Virus record (IMG/VR): IMGVR_UViG_3300043425_001539
Span: 124,001-188,000 of that record
Reading direction: 5' to 3' (one strand)
Length of the DNA stretch: 64,000 nt
The translations under genes and the position numbers were made by a program. The first letter of the stretch is position 1. Each line of letters opens with the position of its first letter. This document shows positions 45,529-53,442 of this stretch, piece after piece. The notes below the pieces were generated by a model, which was not told where the DNA came from, ran no database searches, and saw only the letters and a program-made list of their open reading frames with translations.

Positions 45529-47154
45529 CTATTTATTTTCAATTTCATCCCACGCTTTTATAATTGCGTCAGCATATTGTGCCTCTTTACCTGTCCATCC
45601 TGTTAAAATTGCTCCGCGATATAATGTTTCAGGCAAAACAGAATTTGTATATCCGCCCACCTGAACAGAAAACACATTTACCTTTGGATTTACAGTTTTA
45701 CGATATTGTCGAATAACAGCAAGAACGTCGAGATATGATGAATAATTTGAAGATCTGTAAGTAAACTCTTTAGGTAATTCATCATGCCCAAACAATTCGC
45801 CTCGGCCAGCCTGCATATCTGAATAAATAAAAACTGTGTCATAATGAATTTTTTCGTTTAGTGCAGCATTCCAAAATAACCAAAGACCATTTTCGGTGTT
45901 AGATCCTGTTCTTTTACCTTTCTCTGTAATGTCTGTAAGTTGACTTAATATTCCGTTTCTTTTGGAAATAGGTGTCATTGTTAATCTGTCGCCAAAAACT
46001 CCAACCTCTCCATTGTCAGCTTGTTTTGCAGTTATAACTGAAGACAAATTAGCAATATCAGCAATAGTAATTTTCCCATATTCCGAATTAAATGTGCCCC
46101 AGGCAGAACCAGAATTGTCTGATAAGCATGCAACCTTGCCTTTTAATTTAGGCATATTTGCAACTGAAATATCAATACACTCTTCAAGAGCATCAAGAAT
46201 TTGCTGCTTATAAGGAATGTCAGTGCTTTTAATAATGTTAAAAGCAGTATAATACCTAAATGGGAATTGCTTTCCTTGTAAAACTCCTGCTTTTAATTGC
46301 TCAAGAATTTGTGTTGCTTGATCTTGTGATAATTCAGATTTTGAAAAAATTCCGCGCAAATTCCTCAACAAGGCCATATGAGGAACTTTAATTGTATTCA
46401 AAATTTCCACCCATGTCTTGCCACTTGATTTTAACATTTCCCAAGTTTGCTCAGTTTCTTTTATCGCAACGGTACCTGTACGCATCAATTCATTGATAGT
46501 TTCATTGTTTGCGTGAGATAACCTTACCAAGTCAATTAGCCTTTTTCCTTTATACTTATTAATTTGATATCTAGACATTGATTCTAAAGAATCAGCCCAA
46601 GACCTCTTAAGAATTGAAGGTAAACCTTTTTTAGACCCGTTTAAATACATATAATATTCAAATTGGTTAGTTATGTCGTCAGGACGCGGTGTAATTTCTT
46701 TAGCAAAAGCGCGCATATAACCTGGATTTTTGGCATTAAATTCCACCCGATTTTTGTGACGAATTGCTCTAACATAAATAACCGCGGGATTCAAGCGCAT
46801 TAAGTATTCATTACGTAATTCCTTGGCAAACTCCAAGGTTCCTAAATAATCATAATCCAATGCGTTGTCAATTACTCGCTCAAACACTTGCCCAGCATCT
46901 TCATTTGGGGATATCAAGTCAGCAAAAATAAAATCCGCAGATAATTTCGAAGGATATTCAACCTTGATACCTTTTCTATAGTACTGCGGTTCGCCAAAAA
47001 TTGAGCTCGTTGCAACCATTTTGAGTGTTTGCAAAGGGTTAACTTTAAATGAAGTACCGCCCATAAAGTTTTGTTCAGCTTGCGCTTCATACATAGAGAT
47101 TTCTGCTTTTCTTTGAACGACTTCCTTGGATGCTGATGAGCTTAATCTTGACAT
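45529..47154 (-). CDS. rsr: Ro60 / TROVE domain RNA-binding protein with vWA domain
   Basis: FGEPQYY, LRNEYLMRLNP, YQINKY, MALLRNLR and KQFPFRYYTA; MIDAS DNSGSA and IYSDMQ. Confidence 0.9.
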   Translation of the reverse strand: MSRLSSSASKEVVQRKAEISMYEAQAEQNFMGGTSFKVNPLQTLKMVATSSIFGEPQYYRKGIKVEYPSKLSADFIFADLISPNEDAGQVFERVIDNALDYDYLGTLEFAKELRNEYLMRLNPAVIYVRAIRHKNRVEFNAKNPGYMRAFAKEITPRPDDITNQFEYYMYLNGSKKGLPSILKRSWADSLESMSRYQINKYKGKRLIDLVRLSHANNETINELMRTGTVAIKETEQTWEMLKSSGKTWVEILNTIKVPHMALLRNLRGIFSKSELSQDQATQILEQLKAGVLQGKQFPFRYYTAFNIIKSTDIPYKQQILDALEECIDISVANMPKLKGKVACLSDNSGSAWGTFNSEYGKITIADIANLSSVITAKQADNGEVGVFGDRLTMTPISKRNGILSQLTDITEKGKRTGSNTENGLWLFWNAALNEKIHYDTVFIYSDMQAGRGELFGHDELPKEFTYRSSNYSSYLDVLAVIRQYRKTVNPKVNVFSVQVGGYTNSVLPETLYRGAILTGWTGKEAQYADAIIKAWDEIENK

Positions 47155-47180
47155 AATAAAAATTGGTTTAATAAGTTAAA

Positions 47181-47262
47181 AAATCGAGAATATCAAAAAG
47201 AGTTTTTAATAAAGTATCATTTACAAATTGATTTTGAAGTAACTCTTTTTCCGCTTCGATTT
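47181..47262 (-). ncRNA. Y RNA-like element 1
   Basis: AAAUCGA-AGCGG-AAAAAGAGUU-ACUUCAA...AACUCUUUUU-GAUAUUC-UCGAUUU. Terminal stem plus inner stem; ends 26 nt upstream of the Ro60 ATG. Confidence 0.7.
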
Positions 47263-47263
47263 G

Positions 47264-47336
47264 AGCAACAAGCGAGACTCGAACTCGCAACATTTAGTTT
47301 GGAAAACTAACACTCTACCAATTGAGCTATTGTTGC
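47264..47336 (-). tRNA. tRNA-Gly(TCC)
   Basis: Cloverleaf: GCAACAA/TTGTTGC acceptor, TTAGT-TTTCCAA-ACTAA anticodon arm, TTCGAGT T-loop; no encoded CCA. Confidence 0.9.
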
Positions 47337-47341
47337 TTATT

Positions 47342-47426
47342 TTTTCTTGAGAAAATTATTAAAGGTGTTGGTGTGTGAAAATTCTAAAACAATTTTGAAG
47401 TAACCTTTAATACCGCTTCAAGAAAA
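47342..47426 (-). ncRNA. Y RNA-like element 2
   Basis: UUUUCUUGA-AGCGG-UAUUAAAGGU-UACUUCAA...ACCUUUAAUA-AUUUUC-UCAAGAAAA. Same architecture as element 1 with compensatory stem changes. Confidence 0.7.
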
Positions 47427-47431
47427 TATTT

Positions 47432-47482
47432 TTTTTAAAGAACGTTTGTAGATATAATATACAAGTAATGATAAATAGTTTT
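47432..47482 (-). promoter_or_regulatory. Promoter and leader duplicated upstream of both RNA transcription units
   Basis: ttttttaaagaacgtttgtagatata...ataaatagtttt is near-identical to 50241-50292 and contains the AAAAC-N15-GTAT motif. Confidence 0.7.
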
Positions 47483-47507
47483 TGTGATTTGATATTTTTT
47501 TTTAAAT

Positions 47508-48254
47508 TTAATCAAACGGCAAAGAAACTCCTCTTTTTCCAACAACGGCACAAGATAAAAAGTTTGCAAAACTTATTGAAGCGTTCAAATCCTTTGTTTC
47601 TAAATAAGTAATACCAAAAGCCGCAACAAAAGTATCTCCTGCACCACTTACATCAATGGTTTCTTTTGGATTTTTAAGAGCGAATGTTTTGTTGTTTATC
47701 ATCGCTCCTCTTGCGCCCAGTGTAACAATAATATTACTTTTATCAGAAATATGCAAATTGTTTGACATTTCGCTTTCGTTTAACTTAATAAATGTAAATT
47801 CTTTAACAATTTCATCAGTTAAAATTTTCTTGGAATCCAACAAAGTTAATTTGCCATTTTTTGCTATTTTTAATAAATCATCATGCCCTAAAAAACCTTT
47901 GTTATAATCACTTACAATTACTAAATCCGCTTCTTTAATCTCTTTTATATTTTCTTCTGTGATGTTAATTTTTCCAACTGGTTGCAATTCTCCGTCATCA
48001 ATTCTAACAATCATTTGGTTTGACTTTTCATCAACAATCCTTGTTTTTTTAATCAATTCTTTCTGATGCCAAAATGTTATACTTGTCTCGGGATTTATTG
48101 ATTTAATGTTTTCTACAACATTTCCTGCCATTCCAGGGTTTTGTGTAGTTTTAATTGGATTAAAAACTGGAACAGGCGCTTCAGGACACAGCCTAACAGT
48201 TTTTCCATAAATAAATTCATCAGTACAAAGTTCACCTATAACTATTACTTTCAT
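47508..48254 (-). CDS. rfaE1: Heptose-7-phosphate kinase-like PfkB protein (HldE/RfaE domain I)
   Basis: RLCPEAPVPV, GMAGNV, IVSDYNKG, VTLGARGA and DVSGAGDTF motifs. Confidence 0.85.
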   Translation of the reverse strand: MKVIVIGELCTDEFIYGKTVRLCPEAPVPVFNPIKTTQNPGMAGNVVENIKSINPETSITFWHQKELIKKTRIVDEKSNQMIVRIDDGELQPVGKINITEENIKEIKEADLVIVSDYNKGFLGHDDLLKIAKNGKLTLLDSKKILTDEIVKEFTFIKLNESEMSNNLHISDKSNIIVTLGARGAMINNKTFALKNPKETIDVSGAGDTFVAAFGITYLETKDLNASISFANFLSCAVVGKRGVSLPFD

Positions 48255-48720
48255 AATTTAAAATTTTTGTTGTTGAATATTTTTCAATTCTTGGAAAAAA
48301 AATTAGTTCTTTAGCATATTCACTTCCTATAACTCCATTTTTGCGATACTCTTCTCCTACTATTAAATAATCAGGGTTTAATCTTTTAATTGCATTTTTA
48401 AGTTCTTCTGAGTCATCAAAAACAATAATGTTTGATACATAAACTATCGAGCTTAACATCTCAATTCTATCTTTTAAAGAATTATACGGTCGCAATTCGC
48501 CTTTTAACTCTTTAATTCTACGATCTGTGTCAATTCCTACTGTTACTTCCCCGTATGAATAAGCATATTTAAGTAAACGAATATGACCGTTGTGTAACAC
48601 ATCAAAAGTACCGTTAACCCAAACCTTTTTATTTAATTTACTATAATGATTTGGCGCAGGAAGACTGGAATAAAAATCCCAGTCTTCATCATCAAGAAAT
48701 TTAGTGGTTTCTTTATTCAT
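48232..48720 (-). CDS. rfaE2: Heptose-1-phosphate adenylyltransferase-like protein (RfaE domain II / cytidylyltransferase)
   Basis: VNGTFDVLHNGH, VGIDTD..LKGELRP and YSTTKI; start reassigned to MNKETT. Confidence 0.85.
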   Translation of the reverse strand: MNKETTKFLDDEDWDFYSSLPAPNHYSKLNKKVWVNGTFDVLHNGHIRLLKYAYSYGEVTVGIDTDRRIKELKGELRPYNSLKDRIEMLSSIVYVSNIIVFDDSEELKNAIKRLNPDYLIVGEEYRKNGVIGSEYAKELIFFPRIEKYSTTKILNYESNSYR

Positions 48721-48725
48721 GTGTA

Positions 48726-49112
48726 CTACTTTTGCGAATCGCCAGCCCAAACTCGGTAACTGTCTTCATCAAAGTGTTGTGTTGATACTTCAAAAACAAT
48801 GCCATCTGTAAGAGCTTCAAGTTGATGCGGTTGTCCTGGATATTGTCGAACAGAGTCTCCTTCTCTTAATGTTATTTCATTGACTTTTGCGGTTTGCGTA
48901 TCTATCCAACGATAAATAAATTCGCCTTCTTTAACATACCAAGTTTCATCTTTAAGCATGTGATAATGCATTGAAAATTTTGCGCCTGCTTTAAAACACA
49001 AAAGTTTTCCGCAATAAAATTCATTATTTTCAAATACAATCTCATGTCCCCATCCTTTAGGAACATTGCATTCTTTGCACTCCTTTGCATTGAATATGTT
49101 TGGTTTTTTCAT
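48726..49112 (-). CDS. Cupin (mannose-6-phosphate isomerase-like)
   Basis: KGWGHE, FSMHYHMLKDETWYV, PH.L and EVST..F.EDSYR motifs. Confidence 0.8.
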   Translation of the reverse strand: MKKPNIFNAKECKECNVPKGWGHEIVFENNEFYCGKLLCFKAGAKFSMHYHMLKDETWYVKEGEFIYRWIDTQTAKVNEITLREGDSVRQYPGQPHQLEALTDGIVFEVSTQHFDEDSYRVWAGDSQK

Positions 49113-49141
49113 AAAAATATATTTGATTTATATATTCAGAG

Positions 49142-49212
49142 CAGAAGCATTAGGATTCGAACCTAAAATAACGCTTTTGGAGAGCGCCATGATACCTTTT
49201 CACCATACTCCT
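49142..49212 (-). tRNA. tRNA-Trp(CCA)
   Basis: AGGAGTA/TGCTTCT acceptor, GCGCT-CTCCAAA-AGCGT anticodon arm, TTCGAAT T-loop, G73. Confidence 0.88.
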
Positions 49213-49216
49213 GTAT

Positions 49217-49390
49217 TTATTCACAGTATTTATTTTTTCTGCACTTGTATTTATTCTCTTCTTTCTTTTTATCTTTAAATACTTTAGGGGCAAACCTTCC
49301 ATCATAGAATCCTTGTTCCTGGGCATTTTTTCTTTGTTTACCCATTTCAATTTTCCTAAGTTGTTCTGAAGTTATCACAAATTTTTTCAT
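49217..49390 (-). CDS. Small basic protein, candidate ArfA-like ribosome rescue factor (57 aa, not in ORF track)
   Basis: MKKFVITSEQLRKIEMGKQRKNAQEQGFYDGRFAPKVFKDKKKEENKYKCRKNKYCE. It exactly fills the gap between tRNA-Gln and tRNA-Trp and has an AT-rich start context. The ArfA likeness is inference. Confidence 0.55.
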   Translation of the reverse strand: MKKFVITSEQLRKIEMGKQRKNAQEQGFYDGRFAPKVFKDKKKEENKYKCRKNKYCE

Positions 49391-49412
49391 ATTAAAATTT
49401 TTAAATTGTGAG

Positions 49413-49483
49413 TTATCTGATCTGGGCTCGAACCAGAAATTTAGGACTCAAAAACCTACGTGATACCATTTCACTATCAGACA
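49413..49483 (-). tRNA. tRNA-Gln(TTG)
   Basis: TGTCTGA/TCAGATA acceptor (U1-A72), TAGGT-TTTTGAG-TCCTA anticodon arm, TTCGAGC T-loop. Confidence 0.85.
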
Positions 49484-49488
49484 ATATG

Positions 49489-49562
49489 TAGGCCTGGCAG
49501 GGTACGATCCTGCAACCCCTGAATTAAAAGTTCAGTGCTCTATCCATTTGAGCTACAAGCCT
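49489..49562 (-). tRNA. tRNA-Lys(TTT)
   Basis: AGGCTTG/CAGGCCT acceptor, CTGAA-CTTTTAA-TTCAG anticodon arm; atypical ATCGTAC T-loop. Confidence 0.88.
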
Positions 49563-49569
49563 ATATTTG

Positions 49570-49641
49570 AGCCTTCTGTCGGACTCGAACCAACATCTTC
49601 TAAATTACAAATTTAAAGCTTTACCATTAAGCTAAGAAGGC
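49570..49641 (-). tRNA. tRNA-Thr(TGT)
   Basis: GCCTTCT/AGAAGGC acceptor, TTAAA-TTTGTAA-TTTAG anticodon arm, TTCGAGT T-loop. Confidence 0.88.
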
Positions 49642-49649
49642 AATTTGTG

Positions 49650-49725
49650 TCCGAGAAGAAGGGTTCGAACCTTCATGATGTCTGGTTCCCAAAACCAGAG
49701 GCTTAGCCAATTAGCCCATTCTCGG
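49650..49725 (-). tRNA. tRNA-Pro(TGG)
   Basis: CCGAGAA/TTCTCGG acceptor, CTGGT-TTTGGGA-ACCAG anticodon arm, TTCGAAC T-loop. Confidence 0.88.
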
Positions 49726-49735
49726 AAATTTGATT

Positions 49736-49777
49736 AAAAACAAAAAGGTCCAGATAATTTAATTACCTGGACCTTTT
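49736..49777 (-). terminator. Intrinsic terminator inside the tRNA operon (attenuator terminator)
   Basis: RNA AAAAGGUCCAGGUAAU-UAA-AUUAUCUGGACCUUUU followed by UGUUUUU. Confidence 0.85.
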
Positions 49778-49799
49778 AAGAATAATAATTACTATTATA

Positions 49800-49919
49800 C
49801 TAAGGTCCAGTATCTGGCCACGTAGACGGTTGTTGAACACAACCAATAACACCAACCGGTGTAGCAACTGTTTTGCTTGTTGCTTTTGAAATTTTAGCTG
49901 ATGTGATTTGTTGTTTCAT
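49800..49919 (-). CDS. Putative attenuator leader peptide (39 aa, not in ORF track)
   Basis: MKQQITSAKISKATSKTVATPVGVIGCVQQPSTWPDTGP*. Its last codons contain CUGGACCUU, complementary to the 5' arm of the downstream terminator. Confidence 0.7.
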   Translation of the reverse strand: MKQQITSAKISKATSKTVATPVGVIGCVQQPSTWPDTGP

Positions 49920-49938
49920 ATTTTTAATTTTAATTTAG

Positions 49939-50010
49939 TGGCGGGGCCGGGAATCGAACCCGAACCTCCAGGTTATGAGCCTGGCGAACTACCGTTATTA
50001 CCACCCCGCA
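49939..50010 (-). tRNA. tRNA-Met(CAT), initiator-like
   Basis: TGCGGGG/CCCCGCC acceptor with a 1:72 mismatch, CCAGG-CTCATAA-CCTGG anticodon arm, TTCGATT T-loop; weak D-stem. Confidence 0.8.
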
Positions 50011-50019
50011 ATGTTTTAG

Positions 50020-50094
50020 AGATCATAGAAAGAATCGAACTTTCGCTTACCGGCGCGGACGCCCTTTCCGGCTTTCTACCAACAGAATATGGTC
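50020..50094 (-). ncRNA. tRNA-like RNA lacking a canonical anticodon loop
   Basis: GACCATA/TATGATC acceptor, TTCT-GTTGGT-AGAA D-arm and GAAAG-TTCGATT-CTTTC T-arm; the anticodon arm GCCGG/CCGGT closes a 14-nt loop. Confidence 0.6.
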
Positions 50095-50116
50095 AATTTT
50101 TACTATTATATATTTT

Positions 50117-50240
50117 TTCTTTTCTTGAGAATTTTAACCAAAGGCGTTAAGAAAGGGGGAAAGCAAATTTCAGTGTTAAAACCTATATTGCTTAGTAGAG
50201 CTATATTGAAGTAACCATCGGTACCGCTTCAAGAAAAGAA
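50117..50240 (-). ncRNA. Y RNA-like element 3 (larger variable domain)
   Basis: UUCUUUUCUUGA-AGCGG-UACCGAUGGU-UACUUCAA...GCCUUUGGU-UAAAAUUC-UCAAGAAAAGAA. Confidence 0.7.
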
Positions 50241-50292
50241 TTTTTTAAAGAACGTTTGTAGATATAATATACACAAGATAATAAATAGTTTT
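50241..50292 (-). promoter_or_regulatory. Promoter and leader of the Y3-tRNA-attenuator unit
   Basis: Duplicate of 47432-47482. Confidence 0.7.
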
Positions 50293-50309
50293 CAGAAAAT
50301 AAAAAATAT

Positions 50310-50525
50310 TTATTTATTTTTTGTGCTTTCTGCTATGATATAAAAAATGTATTTAATCATAACAAAAATATACGGCATGCAAGCTGCAATTCCCAATTTT
50401 AGATGCCATATTTGGTACCCAAACATATAAGAAAAACCGGCCAAAACTCCTAAAAAGAGTGGGAGAAATATTACATAAATAATAAAATATGCCTCCCACT
50501 GTAATCTATCAAAGAATAATTTCAT
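50310..50525 (-). CDS. Small membrane protein
   Basis: Two predicted transmembrane segments. Confidence 0.55.
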   Translation of the reverse strand: MKLFFDRLQWEAYFIIYVIFLPLFLGVLAGFSYMFGYQIWHLKLGIAACMPYIFVMIKYIFYIIAESTKNK

Positions 50526-50542
50526 ATATTTTTATATTTTTA

Positions 50543-51091
50543 TTACCACAATCCATCAGAACTTTTAATATCCTTGACTTTAGACAAATCCCAATCAAAA
50601 TCTGAATGAACTTTAGATTTACTAAATATGCCTTTCATATATCTGACATTTCTAATATCCCAATTTCTTAGATTACCATCAAAAGGAGTATCATAAAACA
50701 TAGATGCCATGTTGGTTACTTTACTAACATTCCACCCGCTAACGTCACCCTTAAAAGGTGTCCCTTCAAACATACCTTCCATGTTGGTTACATTGCTAAC
50801 GTCCCATTCGCTAATGTCACCTTTAAAATCTGACCCATAAAACATGTAGGACATATTTTTTACATTACTAACATTCCATTCGCTAATGTTGCCATTAAAA
50901 GGCATTTCTGCAAATAAGAATGACATGTCTTTAATTCGCGAAACATCAACATGACTTAAATCTGCATTAGGCCCAAATTTAGCTATTTCATTTTCAATTA
51001 TCGACTCTAAAGATTTCCGATCTATTGCATAAATAACTTTGTTTTGAGCAGCTTCGTTAAGAAACTGATCGAAAGATTTTAAATTTTTCAT
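50543..51091 (-). CDS. BspA-type / DUF285 leucine-rich repeat protein with N-terminal tag
   Basis: 24-aa repeats FNGxISxWNVSNVxNMxxMF; N-terminus MKNLKSFDQFLNEA. Confidence 0.85.
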   Translation of the reverse strand: MKNLKSFDQFLNEAAQNKVIYAIDRKSLESIIENEIAKFGPNADLSHVDVSRIKDMSFLFAEMPFNGNISEWNVSNVKNMSYMFYGSDFKGDISEWDVSNVTNMEGMFEGTPFKGDVSGWNVSKVTNMASMFYDTPFDGNLRNWDIRNVRYMKGIFSKSKVHSDFDWDLSKVKDIKSSDGLW

Positions 51092-51095
51092 TTTT

Positions 51096-51872
51096 TTAAA
51101 TTTTTATATGTTTCAGACCATACATTCTATCTACATTATCAGCCTTTGATAAATTCCATTGACTAATATCGCCTTTAAACTTAGAGTCTAAGAACATTAT
51201 AAATACATCTCTGACATTGCTAACGTCCCATTTGCTAATGTCGCCGTTAAATCGAGATTCTGCAAACATGTGCGTCATATCTCTAACTTTGCTAACATTC
51301 CACTTGCTGATGTCACCGTTAAAAGTTGTCTTTTGAAACATGTGCGACATATCAATAACTTTGCTGACATCCCACTTGCTGATGTCGCCATTAAATTTAG
51401 ACCCTTCAAACAATGATGACATCATTTCAACATTACTTACATCCCATTGACTAATGTCGCCGTTAAATTTAGAATATGCAAACATATCAGACATATCACG
51501 TACATTGCTTACATCCCACTTGCTAACATCGCCGTTAAACGAAGAATGACGAAACATTCCCCACACAGTGCGAGCATTACTAACATTCCACTTGCTAACA
51601 TCGCCGTTAAATTTTGAGAATGCAAATGTATCATTAAAATTAGTAACATTGCTTACATCCCACTTGCTAACGTCGCCGTTAAATTTTGTACCTGAAAAAG
51701 CGGCGCTTATATCGGTTAGACCTGAAACATCAATGTGATTTAAGTCAGCATTTGGTCCTAGCAATTGAATTTCTTTTAAAATAATTGGTTTTAATTCTTT
51801 TGCGTTCTTTGGGACAATAATTTCGCGTTCTGCTTCATTAAGAAACTGATCAAATGTTTTTAAATTTTTCAT
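51096..51872 (-). CDS. BspA-type / DUF285 LRR protein with N-terminal tag
   Basis: Tandem 24-aa FNGDVSKWDVSNV repeats; N-terminus MKNLKTFDQFLNEA. Confidence 0.85.
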   Translation of the reverse strand: MKNLKTFDQFLNEAEREIIVPKNAKELKPIILKEIQLLGPNADLNHIDVSGLTDISAAFSGTKFNGDVSKWDVSNVTNFNDTFAFSKFNGDVSKWNVSNARTVWGMFRHSSFNGDVSKWDVSNVRDMSDMFAYSKFNGDISQWDVSNVEMMSSLFEGSKFNGDISKWDVSKVIDMSHMFQKTTFNGDISKWNVSKVRDMTHMFAESRFNGDISKWDVSNVRDVFIMFLDSKFKGDISQWNLSKADNVDRMYGLKHIKI

Positions 51873-51897
51873 TTACTATGTTTTTTTTTATATATAT

Positions 51898-52737
51898 TTA
51901 GTTAAACAAATCTTCTTTAGACGTTACGTCTCGCAGATTTGTCAAATTCCACATATGAACACTTCTTTTAAATTTAGATCCTTGGAAGATACTTTCAATG
52001 TATTGCACTTGTCTTACGTCCCACTTACTAATGTCTTGATTAAATGATGAGCCATTAAACATAAAACTCATATTTTCTACATTGCTAACGTTCCATTTGC
52101 CGATGTTTTGATTAAATCGAGAGTCAGCAAACATCCATTGCATATCGGTAACATTTAATACATTCCAATTGCCGATGTCTTGATTAAATTTCGATAACCT
52201 AAACATATATGACATATCAGTTACTCGTCTTACGTTCCACTTGCTGATGTCACCGTTAAATTGTGATTCCGTAAACATTCCACGCATCAGCTCTACATTA
52301 CTCACGTTCCAACCACTGATATCTCCTTTAAATTTGGAATCTTTGAACATATTAGACATATCAATGACATTACCAACATCCCATTTGCTGATATCTTTAT
52401 TGAACTCTGATCCTTCAAACATACCTGACATATCTTTTACTTTGCCAACATTCCACTTGCTGATGTCACTATTAAAATGAGAATACAAAAACATATTTTT
52501 CATAGAAGTAACATTGCTAACATCCCACTTGCTGATATTGCCTTTAAATTGTGACCCTTCAAACAAGGATACCATGTTGGTAACTTGCGAAACGTCAATA
52601 TGATTCAGATCTGCTTTAGGTCCAAGTCTAGCAATTTCGCTTTCTACTATATCCTTTAAAGTTTGTCGATCTTTAGCAATAATAGTTTCTTGTGTAGCTT
52701 CATTAAGAAAATGTTCAAAAGTTTTTAAATTTTTCAT
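51898..52737 (-). CDS. BspA-type / DUF285 LRR protein with N-terminal tag
   Basis: Tandem 24-aa repeats; N-terminus MKNLKTFEHFLNEA. Confidence 0.85.
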   Translation of the reverse strand: MKNLKTFEHFLNEATQETIIAKDRQTLKDIVESEIARLGPKADLNHIDVSQVTNMVSLFEGSQFKGNISKWDVSNVTSMKNMFLYSHFNSDISKWNVGKVKDMSGMFEGSEFNKDISKWDVGNVIDMSNMFKDSKFKGDISGWNVSNVELMRGMFTESQFNGDISKWNVRRVTDMSYMFRLSKFNQDIGNWNVLNVTDMQWMFADSRFNQNIGKWNVSNVENMSFMFNGSSFNQDISKWDVRQVQYIESIFQGSKFKRSVHMWNLTNLRDVTSKEDLFN

Positions 52738-52770
52738 TTACTATGTTTTTATTAATTTTAATATTGCACA

Positions 52771-53442
52771 TTATTTTTTTGCATATGAAGAGATTTTCCA
52801 ATTTGAAGTATCCCCCTTGAAAGCTGAGTTATTAAACATGTCGGTCATATCCTCAACCTTACTAACATTCCACTTGCTGATATCTTGATTAAATTCTGAA
52901 GATTGAAACATTCCAGCCATATCATAAACATTACCTACATTCCATTTGCTGATGTCTTTGTTAAATCTTGAGTCTTGAAACATCCAAGACATATCAGTAA
53001 CATTACTAACATTCCACTTGCTGATATCTTGATTAAATTCTGAATAAGCAAACATACCAGTCATAACTTTTACGTTGCTTACATTCCACCTGCTGATATC
53101 TTGATTAAATTCTGATGATGCAAACATATAGGCCATTAATCGAACATTCCGAACATTCCATCCTGAAATGTTACCATTAAAGACTGACTCCTGAAACATA
53201 TAGGACATGTTTTCAACTTGACTAACATCCCATTTACTTATGTTGCCGTTAAAATCTGAATTTTTAAACAACCCCGACATATCTTTAACTTTTGATACAT
53301 CAATATGATTTAAATCCGCCGTAGAACCTTGTGTTTTGATTGCATCTTCAATTAGCTTTATTAAATCTGCTTTATCTTTAGCAATAATTGTTGTGCCTGC
53401 TGCTTCATTAAGAAACTGCTCAAAGGTTTTAAAATTTTTCAT
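52771..53442 (-). CDS. BspA-type / DUF285 LRR protein with N-terminal tag
   Basis: Tandem 24-aa repeats; N-terminus MKNFKTFEQFLNEA. Confidence 0.85.
   Translation of the reverse strand: MKNFKTFEQFLNEAAGTTIIAKDKADLIKLIEDAIKTQGSTADLNHIDVSKVKDMSGLFKNSDFNGNISKWDVSQVENMSYMFQESVFNGNISGWNVRNVRLMAYMFASSEFNQDISRWNVSNVKVMTGMFAYSEFNQDISKWNVSNVTDMSWMFQDSRFNKDISKWNVGNVYDMAGMFQSSEFNQDISKWNVSKVEDMTDMFNNSAFKGDTSNWKISSYAKK

What the first reader, a model, noticed from the sequence alone, without database searches (positions are those of the whole stretch)
49142..49919. Leader-peptide attenuator gating the phage's own tRNAs: a translation-stress sensor
Seen: a 39-codon ORF (49919-49800) ends in ...ACU GGA CCU UAG. 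Its CUGGACCUU is identical to the 3' arm, and complementary to the 5' arm (AAGGUCCAG), of a strong terminator ~20 nt downstream, so antiterminator and terminator are mutually exclusive. Past the terminator lie tRNA-Pro(UGG), Thr(UGU), Lys(UUU), Gln(UUG), a small basic ORF and Trp(CCA), with no promoter motif evident in the ~10 nt gap. 19 of the 39 leader residues are K, Q, T, P or W (AAA x4, CAA x4 as two QQ pairs, ACA x4, ACG, ACU, CCG x2, CCA, CCU, UGG), the amino acids of the gated tRNAs. Known: ribosome-mediated attenuation as in trp and his. Inference: a ribosome reaching the Pro-stop masks the antiterminator and transcription ends, while stalling caused by tRNA depletion or cleavage (for example anti-phage anticodon nucleases) allows read-through and supplies replacement tRNAs on demand. 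I know of no described phage tRNA operon controlled this way. Caveat: AAA and CAA are the default codons in an AT-rich genome.
Basis: partly seen in the sequence, partly recalled or inferred. Interest (0 to 1): 0.92.

Follow-up and report, generated by a model that had tools for sequence, protein, structure and literature searches.

The report
Leader-peptide attenuator gating phage tRNAs
A freshwater jumbo phage places a tiny translated "test" gene and a switchable stop signal in front of five of its own tRNA genes. This probably makes those tRNAs only when ribosomes struggle to read the matching codons, a control circuit I could not find described for tRNA genes.

Summary
On the minus strand, a 39-codon ORF (49919-49800) ends inside CUGGACCUU. 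That 9-mer occurs only three times in 64 kb: there, and as the two arms of a strong terminator 17 nt before tRNA-Pro/Thr/Lys/Gln/(ORF57)/Trp. The alternative hairpin (-17.2 kcal/mol) forms first in the nascent RNA and nearly equals the terminator (-20.5). Of the 38 codons after the start, 17 are read by the five downstream tRNAs (background 0.17, P=4e-5).

The ORF itself is an orphan. However, related TROVE-encoding jumbo phages carry three non-homologous units with the same layout: promoter, short ORF, a copy of the terminator arm at the stop codon, terminator, then a tRNA array.
- **Ser-Arg-Pro-Ile-Met-Leu arrays:** the leader core is ILPSILRPSIRRS. Across 17 variants its codons change only among ATA, TTA and TCN.
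- **A 16-tRNA array:** the 35-codon leader has a codon for all 16 tRNAs (29 of 34 cognate; joint P<5e-6).

I conclude this is a ribosome-mediated attenuator that senses decoding capacity and gates tRNA transcription. All evidence is computational. The proposed anti-nuclease trigger is untested. No RNA data were available, and I found no prior description.

The parts
50203..50292 (-). One copy of a ~90-nt direct repeat (the other copy is at 47482-47392, before tRNA-Gly). It holds a promoter-like box (TATCTTGTGTATATTATATC) and a GAAGCGG..GTTACTTC hairpin motif. It is the probable start region of the tRNA transcription unit.
   Evidence: blastn gives 86% identity over 91 nt. It resembles the TAnnTTTG + TATATAA region found upstream of leaders in relatives. 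Its promoter function is inferred.
50106..50113 (-). ATATATAA, the phage's gene-upstream motif, immediately before the tRNA-like remnant and tRNA-Met.
   Evidence: The motif ATATA[AT]A is enriched about 7-fold in the 60 nt upstream of genes (25 of 88 genes). The only hits in 50600-47000 are at 50537, 50113, 49135/49133 and 47950.
50011..50090 (-). A degenerate tRNA-like remnant with an intact T-arm (GAAAGTTCGATTCTTTC).
   Evidence: Read directly from the sequence. ARAGORN and Rfam do not call it, and its fold z-score is 0.3.
49938..50010 (-). tRNA-Met(CAU), upstream of the leader ORF and therefore not gated by the terminator.
   Evidence: ARAGORN; Rfam tRNA model at 46.8 bits.
49800..49919 (-). 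Leader ORF of 39 codons plus UAG. Its start context is A-rich with no Shine-Dalgarno sequence, like the phage's other genes. Of the 38 codons after the start, 17 are cognate to the five downstream tRNAs. The last 11 codons read QQPSTWPDTGP.
   Evidence: Public gene calling annotated it on 3 contigs. It has no homologue among 1.84 billion cluster representatives.
49814..49819 (-). Segment 1 (GGCCAG). It can pair with arm A as a small hairpin with a 3-nt loop, a candidate pause or anti-antiterminator hairpin.
   Evidence: RNAfold gives -6.2 kcal/mol for 49824-49800. This is a weak structure and chance is not excluded.
49802..49810 (-). Arm A (segment 2), CUGGACCUU. It is the antiterminator 5' strand and spans the last three sense codons plus the first base of the stop codon.
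   Evidence: One of only three copies in the window. The A:B hairpin at 49811-49766 is -17.2 kcal/mol and is the minimum-energy fold of the nascent RNA.
49767..49775 (-). Arm B (segment 3), AAGGUCCAG. It is shared between the antiterminator (with A) and the terminator (with C).
49736..49777 (-). Intrinsic terminator: a 16-bp stem (arm C is CUGGACCUU at 49753-49745), a 3-nt loop and a UUUUUGUUUUU tract.
   Evidence: It is of the same type as six other intergenic terminators in the window.
49649..49725 (-). tRNA-Pro(UGG), the first gated tRNA.
49569..49641 (-). tRNA-Thr(UGU).
49488..49562 (-). tRNA-Lys(UUU).
49412..49483 (-). tRNA-Gln(UUG).
49217..49390 (-). A 57-aa basic protein gene inside the array.
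   Evidence: Conserved at 82-98% identity in other assemblies, at the same place between tRNA-Gln and tRNA-Trp. No family match.
49141..49212 (-). tRNA-Trp(CCA), the last gated tRNA.
49126..49135 (-). The next promoter-like motif (ATATATAAAT). It marks the end of the gated unit, since the cupin gene that follows has its own signal.

Best explanation
This is a ribosome-mediated transcription attenuator that controls five of the phage's own tRNA genes.

**Proposed sequence of events**
1. Transcription starts upstream of tRNA-Met and runs through it into the 39-codon leader.
2. If the leader's Lys, Gln, Thr and Pro codons are decoded quickly, the ribosome reaches the UAG and sits on arm A (49810-49802).
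3. Arm B is then free to pair with arm C. The terminator forms and RNA polymerase stops 10-17 nt before tRNA-Pro.
4. If decoding is slow because the matching aminoacyl-tRNAs are scarce, the ribosome lags at or before codons 29-31.
5. Arm A then pairs with arm B as soon as B is made. The terminator cannot form, and the Pro-Thr-Lys-Gln-ORF57-Trp block is transcribed.

**Result**

**Shown here**
- The ORF, the three arms, the energies and the order of folding.
- The codon-to-tRNA match.
- Recurrence of the design in related phages.

**Inferred**
- Translation of the leader.
- Coupling of the ribosome to the polymerase.
- The response to stalling.
- The promoter position.
For: **Structure in the window**
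- The 9-mer triplet is unique in 64 kb (expected 0.13). The other six intergenic terminators have no third arm.
- The A:B hairpin is -17.2 kcal/mol and the terminator -20.5. For the whole region, the A:B-enforced fold is -26.6 against a minimum of -28.2. The nascent RNA folds into A:B before arm C exists.

**Codon match in the window**
- 17 of 38 codons are cognate (background 0.168, P=4e-5), and all five tRNA species are represented.
- The ORF ranks 2nd of 146 small ORFs.
- The same leader has only 5, 1 and 9 codons cognate to the tRNA sets of the other three arrays.

**Other signals in the window**
- The start context is A-rich with no Shine-Dalgarno sequence, like all 88 genes examined.
- No ATATA[AT]A or TAnnTTTG motif lies between the terminator and tRNA-Pro. 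The next motif is at 49135, after tRNA-Trp.

**Independent analogues in phages with a TROVE protein 57-62% identical**
- **S units, before Ser(UGA)-Arg(UCU)-Pro(UGG)-Ile(UAU)-Met-Leu(UAA):**
  - 11 of 18 codons are cognate (P=3.5e-5).
  - In 17 variants, codons 8, 10-12 and 16 toggle only among ATA, TTA, TCA, TCC and TCT; codon 7 is always ATA and codon 9 is CCT or CCC.
  - The N-terminus and the spacer vary freely.
  - Arm A stays invariant even where a 1-nt indel puts it outside the ORF.
- **F units, before a 16-tRNA array:** 29 of 34 codons are cognate (background 0.516, P=2.5e-5) and 16 of 16 tRNA species are represented (P=4.5e-5; joint P<5e-6).
- **E units:** these contain an EDDLLED run before Glu-Asp-Met-Leu(UAG).
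- **All units:**
  - The stop codon lies within about 6 nt of arm A.
  - A:B is the nascent minimum-energy fold.
  - A conserved TAnnTTTG box lies 45-55 nt upstream of the AUG.
Against: - There are no expression data. No RNA run was listed, so translation, termination efficiency and read-through are all unmeasured.
- ORF39 has no homologue. Nothing can be said about conservation or covariation of this particular element. Two other samples carry it unchanged.
- The regulatory codons are dispersed rather than in a tandem run as in trp, his or pheA.
- W34, P35, T37 and P39 are dictated by the stem sequences themselves. They lie too close to arm A to give antitermination on stalling.
- Two tandem copies of one hairpin would automatically create A:B complementarity.
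- One S-family member (L086) has ATA in place of ATG, although its array is also decayed.
- The E-family codon match is not significant on its own (P=0.07-0.15).
- A conserved GTTCTTTGA(C/A)AT box between terminator and first tRNA in the S, E and F units is unexplained (it is absent from the window).
- Leader-peptide attenuation has not, to my knowledge, been demonstrated in hosts that do not use Shine-Dalgarno sequences.
Confidence: 0.68

Rival explanations
1. This is an ordinary small gene followed by an ordinary terminator. ORF39 encodes a small protein or is a spurious ORF. The hairpin simply ends the tRNA-Met/ORF39 transcript. The downstream tRNAs are made by constitutive leaky read-through or from an unrecognised promoter. 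The third arm and the codon bias are coincidence, or are left over from a tandem duplication of the terminator hairpin.
For: - Small ORFs and terminators inside phage tRNA clusters are commonplace (established knowledge for T4 and T5).
- ORF39 is an orphan.
- Segment 1 plus arm A looks like a degraded copy of the terminator stem (GGCCAG..CUGGACC against GGUCCAG..CUGGACC), which suggests duplication.
- The first-stage scan looked at many windows, so a 1-in-1000 coincidence could surface.
- A TATAAT hexamer lies in the A:B loop (49798-49793).
Against: - Coincidence would have to produce three things together: a 9-mer unique in 64 kb, its placement exactly on the stop codon, and a codon match at P=4e-5.
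- It would then have to recur in three unrelated sequence families of related phages.
- The TATAAT has no usable -35 element. The host appears not to use sigma-70 consensus promoters. Any transcript starting there would still meet the terminator.
Confidence: 0.15
2. The RNA structures act at the level of processing or stability rather than transcription. In this view the A:B and B:C hairpins are RNase III, RNase E or RNase P entry or protection sites. They would define the 5' end of the tRNA precursor or stabilise the upstream RNA, and the ORF would be irrelevant.
For: - The hairpin lies 17 nt before a tRNA, and tRNA precursors need 5' processing.
- In the S, E and F units a conserved GTTCTTTGA(C/A)AT box follows the T-tract and could be a processing signal.
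- A Ro60/TROVE RNA-quality-control protein is encoded 2.6 kb away.
Against: - This does not explain why the ORFs keep an open frame and a start codon.
- It does not explain why variable codons stay within the set served by the downstream tRNAs.
- It does not explain why a 35-codon ORF samples all 16 downstream tRNAs.
- The hairpin plus U-tract has the same form as the phage's gene-end terminators.
Confidence: 0.07
3. The element is translation-coupled but works by a different logic. The leader does sense decoding, but the output is something other than intrinsic-terminator choice. Possibilities include Rho-dependent termination, stalled-ribosome-triggered mRNA cleavage, or the opposite polarity, in which stalling near the 3' end promotes termination.
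For: - The codons nearest arm A (T33, W34, P35) would, on stalling, cover arm A and favour termination (geometry).
- The Pro-rich C-terminus (PDTGP-stop) could itself be a slow-termination or EF-P-sensitive sequence.
Against: - The intrinsic terminator and the exact arm overlap are conserved design features across four families.
- Most cognate codons (14 of 17) lie far enough upstream to leave arm A free.
Confidence: 0.1

Closest known systems
Leader-peptide transcription attenuators of amino-acid operons (trpL, hisL, pheL, thrL, leuL, ilvL of Gammaproteobacteria)
   Same: - A short translated leader enriched in diagnostic codons.
- A stop codon next to segment 2.
- Alternative 2:3 antiterminator and 3:4 terminator hairpins of about -12 to -20 kcal/mol.
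- A possible 1:2 hairpin.
- An output that is a choice between termination and read-through just before the regulated genes.
   Different: - The regulated genes are tRNAs, not biosynthetic enzymes. The signal (decoding capacity) is therefore restored directly by the product.
- The leader samples several codon families (5 here, up to 16 in a relative) rather than a tandem run of one amino acid.
- The leader lies inside a tRNA cluster, directly after tRNA-Met.
- It belongs to a phage, probably of a host that does not use Shine-Dalgarno sequences.
- It matches no Rfam leader family.
T-box riboswitches
   Same: Both are transcription attenuators that report on the state of a specific tRNA and control genes of the translation apparatus.
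   Different: - A T-box binds the uncharged tRNA directly, without a ribosome or an ORF.
- A T-box has a specifier loop and a conserved T-box sequence.
- No T-box match was found here, and this element needs a translated ORF.
Drug-inducible leader-peptide attenuators (ermC/ermK, cat, mef/msr)
   Same: Ribosome stalling on a short leader ORF remodels downstream RNA structure. Some of these elements act through an intrinsic terminator.
   Different: In those systems the stall is caused by an antibiotic and a specific nascent peptide, not by tRNA supply. Nothing here suggests an arrest peptide.
tRNA clusters of T4, T5 and other large phages
   Same: These are also tRNA genes in arrays, interspersed with small ORFs and terminators, and transcribed as polycistronic precursors.
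   Different: To my knowledge, and in the literature searched, none has been described with a leader ORF that overlaps an antiterminator and mirrors the codons of the downstream tRNAs.

Membership tests
Ribosome-mediated (leader-peptide) transcription attenuator | A short ORF with a plausible translation start, immediately upstream of the regulated genes. | tested here: met
   The ORF has 39 codons and the same A-rich start context without a Shine-Dalgarno sequence as the phage's 88 genes. Translation itself was not measured.
Ribosome-mediated (leader-peptide) transcription attenuator | Leader enriched in codons whose decoding reports on the product of the regulated genes. | tested here: met
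   17 of 38 codons are cognate to the five downstream tRNAs (background 0.168, P=4e-5), and 5 of 5 species are represented. The codons are dispersed rather than in a tandem run.
Ribosome-mediated (leader-peptide) transcription attenuator | An intrinsic terminator between the leader and the regulated genes. | tested here: met
   A 16-bp stem plus U-tract at 49777-49736, -20.5 kcal/mol, ending 10 nt before tRNA-Pro.
Ribosome-mediated (leader-peptide) transcription attenuator | An antiterminator that shares a strand with the terminator and forms first. | tested here: met
   A:B has 9 exact base pairs plus an inner helix (-17.2 kcal/mol). It is the minimum-energy fold of the nascent RNA, and the two full folds differ by 1.6 kcal/mol.
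Ribosome-mediated (leader-peptide) transcription attenuator | A ribosome at the leader stop codon covers the antiterminator 5' strand. | tested here: met
   Arm A spans codons 37-39 and the first base of UAG. The same rule, a stop codon within about 6 nt of arm A, holds in the S, E and F units.
Ribosome-mediated (leader-peptide) transcription attenuator | A 1:2 pause or anti-antiterminator hairpin. | tested here: inconclusive
   GGCCAG pairs with CUGGACC at -6.2 kcal/mol with a bulge. This is weak and could be chance.
Ribosome-mediated (leader-peptide) transcription attenuator | Read-through increases when the cognate charged tRNA is limiting, and depends on leader translation. | not testable with these tools
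   No RNA run was listed for this sequence, and the phage is uncultured.
Rfam leader families (Trp_leader, His_leader, Thr_leader, Leu_leader and others) and T-box | A match to the curated covariance model. | tested here: not met
   cmscan at E<=1 over 46500-51000 finds only the tRNAs and sub-threshold noise.
Conserved regulatory element within its own phage lineage | Homologous copies with compensatory changes in relatives. | tested here: not met
   ORF39 and its arms occur only in identical or near-identical contigs. Support comes from analogous elements, not homologous ones.

The most novel reading that the evidence does not exclude
A whole clade of freshwater jumbo phages, and possibly others, puts each tRNA array under its own "codon-sampler" leader peptide. 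This is a short ORF built from the codons served by the array behind it (up to 16 of 16 tRNAs), coupled to an antiterminator/terminator switch. The phage would then measure, array by array, whether the infected cell can decode those codons and would make tRNAs on demand. The same circuit would automatically replace tRNAs destroyed by host anticodon nucleases. This would be the first case of tRNA genes controlled by leader-peptide attenuation, and a new principle for how viruses tune the translation apparatus.
Probability: 0.55. Interest if true: 0.92.

Novelty: new variant of a known kind. Interest (0 to 1): 0.86.

Why it matters
- **An open question about phage tRNAs.** Phage tRNAs are now seen as tools for codon-usage adaptation and for escaping tRNA-targeting defences, but how their expression is controlled is essentially unknown.
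- **A direct feedback loop.** A leader-peptide attenuator in front of tRNA genes would have a product (tRNA) that relieves the very signal that induces it (slow decoding). Such a circuit has not been described for tRNA genes in cells or viruses.
- **An annotation aid.** The codon content of the leader predicts which tRNAs lie downstream.
- **A sign about the hosts.** It would show that ribosome-coupled attenuation works in hosts that do not use Shine-Dalgarno sequences.
- **A testable part.** The element is compact (about 200 nt) and portable, and could serve as a sensor of decoding capacity.

Tried and rejected
- **Homologues of ORF39.**
  - tblastn and blastn against 80 cupin-anchored loci found only self-matches.
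  - phmmer against 1.84 billion representatives found only itself and two spurious repeat proteins.
  - The exact look-up found 3 identical contigs.
  - The search for related loci and the search for homologous proteins refuse 39 aa.
- **Cupin neighbours.** There are 430 relatives, but the gene is a mobile auxiliary gene with no synteny and no tRNAs nearby. It is useless for comparison.
- **ORF57 relatives.** A phage with an 82%-identical ORF57 has Lys-Val-Gln-ORF57-Trp-His. Its contig ends 153 nt before tRNA-Lys, with nothing resembling the leader.
- **tRNA-Pro pattern scan.** It returned 21 loci. None has the Met-gap-Pro-Thr layout, and one (L114) has a possible Pro/Gln leader (P=0.05).
- **GenBank phages.** No relative of the region or of the S unit was found.
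- **Sequencing runs.**
  - No RNA runs were listed.
  - DNA contigs from other samples show the ORF and arms unchanged in one strain.
  - A second strain has 3 unlisted SNPs plus a 1-nt shorter T-tract.
- **Non-coding RNA alternatives.** Rfam gives no family for 49738-49935 or for the tRNA-like remnant. I rejected a Y-RNA reading, which the nearby Ro60 gene had prompted.
- **Sigma-70 promoter scan.** It found fewer sites than shuffles do (25 against 29.8), so it is uninformative for this host type.
- **Covariation.** The S-family arms are invariant. The F-family shows one compensatory pair in the terminator and two wobble-compatible changes in A:B. This is consistent with the model but weak.
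Full report
**1. What is in the window**

The window is part of a 238-kb viral contig from freshwater metagenomes. It has about 31% G+C, nearly all genes lie on the minus strand, and no gene has a Shine-Dalgarno sequence.

Reading the minus strand from 50300 to 49100 gives this order:
- a repeat element;
- an ATATATAA motif (50113);
- a degenerate tRNA-like remnant (50090-50011);
- tRNA-Met(CAU) (50010-49938);
- after 18 nt, a 39-codon ORF (49919-49800);
- after 22 nt, a strong hairpin with a U-tract (49777-49736);
- after 10 nt, tRNA-Pro(UGG), Thr(UGU), Lys(UUU) and Gln(UUG);
- a 57-aa basic ORF;
- tRNA-Trp(CCA);
- a second ATATATAA motif (49135);
- a cupin gene.

**2. Is it more than chance?**

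- CTGGACCTT occurs three times in 64 kb: arm A in the ORF, arm B as its complement, and arm C. Shuffles predict 0.13 occurrences.
- The window has six other clear intergenic terminators of the same A-tract/hairpin/U-tract type. None has an upstream copy of its 3' arm longer than expected.
- The ORF is 48.7% K/Q/T/P/W against 22.7% in the phage's long ORFs (binomial P=3e-4).
- By strict wobble rules, 17 of the 38 codons after the start are read by the five downstream tRNAs, against a background of 0.168 (P=4e-5). All five tRNAs are represented.
- The background is the phage's own codon usage.
- Among 146 ATG-initiated ORFs of 30-60 codons in all six frames, this ORF ranks second overall. It ranks first for its last 11 codons, where 8 of 11 are Q, T, P or W.
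- Part of that tail (W-P-D-T-G-P) is dictated by the stem sequences, so it is not independent evidence.

**3. RNA structures**

| Structure | Energy (kcal/mol) |
|---|---|
| Terminator (B:C) | -20.5 |
| A:B hairpin with its AU-rich inner helix | -17.2 |
| Hairpin of GGCCAG (49819-49814) with arm A | -6.2 |
| Whole region, minimum-energy fold (terminator form) | -28.2 |
| Whole region, A:B enforced | -26.6 |

- When the RNA is truncated just before arm C, the minimum-energy fold is the A:B hairpin.
- The element therefore has the 1:2 / 2:3 / 3:4 layout of classical attenuators, with two nearly isoenergetic and mutually exclusive states.
- Arm A spans codons 37-39 and the first base of UAG, so a terminating ribosome must cover it.
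- A ribosome with its A site at or before codons 29-31 (CAA CAA CCG) leaves arm A free and covers segment 1.
- The UGG codon is only 10 nt from arm A, so stalling there would probably mask arm A. I doubt that Trp is sensed.

**4. Promoters**

- A motif ATATA[AT]A, reminiscent of the T4 late promoter, is enriched about 7-fold just upstream of genes (25 of 88).
- Around the locus it occurs at 50537, 50113 and 49135, that is, before the tRNA cluster and after tRNA-Trp. It does not occur between the terminator and tRNA-Pro.
- The Bacteroidota-type -7 box TAnnTTTG is also absent there.
- A TATAAT hexamer lies in the A:B loop, but it has no -35 partner, and a transcript from it would still meet the terminator.
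- On present evidence, the five tRNAs and ORF57 can be transcribed only by reading through the terminator.
- A ~90-nt repeat (50292-50203 and 47482-47392, 86% identical) precedes both this cluster and tRNA-Gly. It probably carries the promoter.

**5. Relatives of the element itself**

- ORF39 is an orphan.
  - Its only match among 1.84 billion cluster representatives is itself.
  - Its 90% cluster has a single member.
  - The only contigs carrying it are identical.
- One other sample carries the ORF and arms unchanged. Another has three SNPs that were not listed and a T-tract one base shorter.
- A phage whose ORF57 is 82% identical has a differently composed array. Its contig ends too early to tell whether a leader is present.
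- No conservation or covariation test is therefore possible for this particular element.

**6. Analogous elements in related phages (the decisive evidence)**

I anchored a search on the Ro60/TROVE gene 2.6 kb downstream. This returned jumbo-phage contigs whose TROVE protein is 57-62% identical, all with large tRNA arrays.

I then scanned every array start in the fetched loci for a terminator and a short ORF ending next to it. This revealed three further unit types with the same layout but unrelated sequences.

*S units*
- They precede Ser(UGA)-Arg(UCU)-Pro(UGG)-Ile(UAU)-Met-Leu(UAA).
- The ORF has 19 or 24 codons, with the core ILPSILRPSIRRS.
- 11 of 18 codons are strictly cognate (P=3.5e-5), and all six tRNAs are represented.
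- In 17 distinct variants, including metagenomic ones:
  - codons 8, 10-12 and 16 change only among ATA, TTA, TCA, TCC and TCT;
  - codon 7 is always ATA, and codon 9 is CCT or CCC;
  - the amino acid therefore changes (I, L or S), but membership of the downstream tRNA set never does;
  - the N-terminal codons and the spacer vary freely.
- Two more divergent members keep the same rule.
- A 1-nt indel moves the stop codon from 5 nt after arm A to just before it. Arm A (AAAGGUCCUG, pairing with CGGGACCUUU) stays invariant even where it is no longer coding. It is thus conserved as RNA.

*F units*
- They precede an array of up to 16 tRNAs, from Phe to Gln.
- The 35-codon ORF (in L164:6408-6607:-) has 29 of 34 cognate codons (background 0.516, P=2.5e-5).
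- It contains at least one codon for each of the 16 tRNAs (P=4.5e-5). No simulated ORF out of 200,000 met both criteria.
- Arm A (AUCGAAGC) ends at the stop codon.
- The terminator stem shows a compensatory C-G to U-A change.
- The two variable positions of the A:B helix stay paired through G.U wobble pairs.

*E units*
- They precede Glu-Asp-Met-Leu(UAG) and carry an EDDLLED-type run.
- The codon match is not significant alone (P=0.07-0.15).
- Arm A (UCAGAGG) lies 3 nt before the stop codon.

*Across all units*
- In the cross-comparison, each leader matches its own array best. The window ORF scores 17, against 5, 1 and 9 for the S, E and F tRNA sets. S leaders score 10-11, against 0-6 for the other sets.
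- In every unit, the nascent RNA folds into A:B. In two units, A:B is even the global minimum.
- Each unit has a conserved TAnnTTTG box 45-55 nt upstream of the AUG. Together with the lack of Shine-Dalgarno sequences, this suggests a Bacteroidota host; that is an inference.
- A phage that does use Shine-Dalgarno sequences (L114) has a possible Pro/Gln leader (PQIQHQQ) before Pro(UGG)-Gln(UUG), but the statistic is marginal (P=0.05).

**7. Interpretation**

- The recurrence of four features together is very hard to explain except by ribosome-mediated attenuation:
  - a short ORF;
  - a stop codon on the antiterminator strand;
  - a terminator;
  - a tRNA array whose anticodons mirror the ORF's codons.
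- The window's element is a non-homologous member of this design class.
- The circuit most likely provides feedback on tRNA supply. Slow decoding of the sampled codons leads to read-through and more tRNA, which speeds decoding and restores termination.
- With no ribosome on the leader, the default state is read-through.
Lys(UUU) and Gln(UUG) are classical nuclease targets (established knowledge). Nothing here tests the idea.
- My confidence that the window element works as an attenuator is about 0.68.
- The main rival (about 0.15) is an ordinary small ORF plus terminator with coincidental or duplication-derived complementarity.

**8. Comparison with known systems, and novelty**

- The element works like the trp, his and pheA leader attenuators, and it meets every sequence-level defining feature I could test.
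- It matches none of the curated leader families or T-box.
- It differs from those systems in three ways: the target is tRNA genes, the leader samples several codon families, and the setting is a phage.
- Five full-text literature searches found nothing on leader peptides or attenuation in front of phage tRNA genes. The library does not cover all journals.
- I rate it a new variant of a known kind of mechanism, and of high interest because it is directly testable.

**9. Limits**

- All evidence is computational.
- No RNA data were available, and the phage is uncultured.
- The window's own element has no homologues.
- The family-level argument rests on one phage clade.
- An unexplained conserved box (GTTCTTTGA(C/A)AT) lies between terminator and first tRNA in the S, E and F units. 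It is too close to the tRNA to be a normal promoter, but it should be examined.

Noticed in passing
window 45529-47154 (-): A Ro60/TROVE-domain protein gene (Pfam PF05731) lies 108 nt downstream of tRNA-Gly(UCC). It is 48.7% identical to Bacillus phage G gp540. All of its phage relatives (57-62% identity) have large tRNA arrays within a few kb, which suggests a link between phage Ro60 and tRNA or tRNA-like RNAs.
   Followed up: partly
window 50203-50292 and 47392-47482 (-); third partial copy about 47225-47255: A ~90-nt direct repeat (86% identical) lies upstream of both tRNA units. It carries a promoter-like box and a GAAGCGG..GTTACTTC hairpin motif, and the hairpin motif recurs just 3' of tRNA-Gly. 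Assemblies from other samples break at this repeat.
   Followed up: partly
window 50011-50090 (-): A tRNA-like remnant with a perfect T-arm (GAAAGTTCGATTCTTTC) lies directly upstream of tRNA-Met. Neither ARAGORN nor Rfam recognises it, and its fold is no better than shuffles.
   Followed up: yes
L087:11917-12082, L088:8917-9082, L089:10198-10371 and others: A conserved ~166-nt insert with no ORF (it begins GCCCTCTGCCTAGCGCTGGGTATGGATCG) lies between tRNA-Arg(UCU) and tRNA-Pro(UGG) in the S arrays of relatives. L085 lacks it, and L086 has a longer version containing an ORF. It may be an unknown structured RNA or a mobile insert.
   Followed up: no
L088:8725-8750, L088:11340-11366, L164:6408-6607 and the other S, E and F units: A conserved GTTCTTTGA(C/A)AT box lies between the terminator T-tract and the first tRNA in three otherwise unrelated leader units. 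Its function is unknown. The window's repeat element has GTTCTTTAAAAAA.
   Followed up: no
window, 15-35 nt upstream of 25 of 88 genes (for example 50537, 50113, 49135, 43040, 21185): An ATATA[AT]A motif is enriched about 7-fold upstream of start codons. It is probably a phage promoter resembling the T4 late promoter TATAAATA.
   Followed up: partly
window 49217-49390 (-): A 57-aa very basic protein is encoded between tRNA-Gln and tRNA-Trp. It is conserved at 82-98% identity at the same position in other assemblies and matches no family.
   Followed up: partly
window 50543-53442 (-): Four tandem paralogues of DUF285 (BspA-like repeat) proteins lie immediately upstream of the tRNA cluster.
   Followed up: no
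window 47508-49112 (-): Cupin, cytidylyltransferase and PfkB-kinase genes form a sugar-nucleotide (ADP-heptose-like) module. The cupin gene alone has 430 relatives in IMG/VR in non-syntenic contexts, so it behaves as a mobile auxiliary gene.
   Followed up: partly
L238:564-900 and L245:77-420: The same TTTGTGAAACAA..ATATATAA promoter/5'-UTR type used by the S and F units is followed here by about 120 nt with no ORF and then a strong terminator, with no tRNA. This may be a small RNA gene.
   Followed up: no
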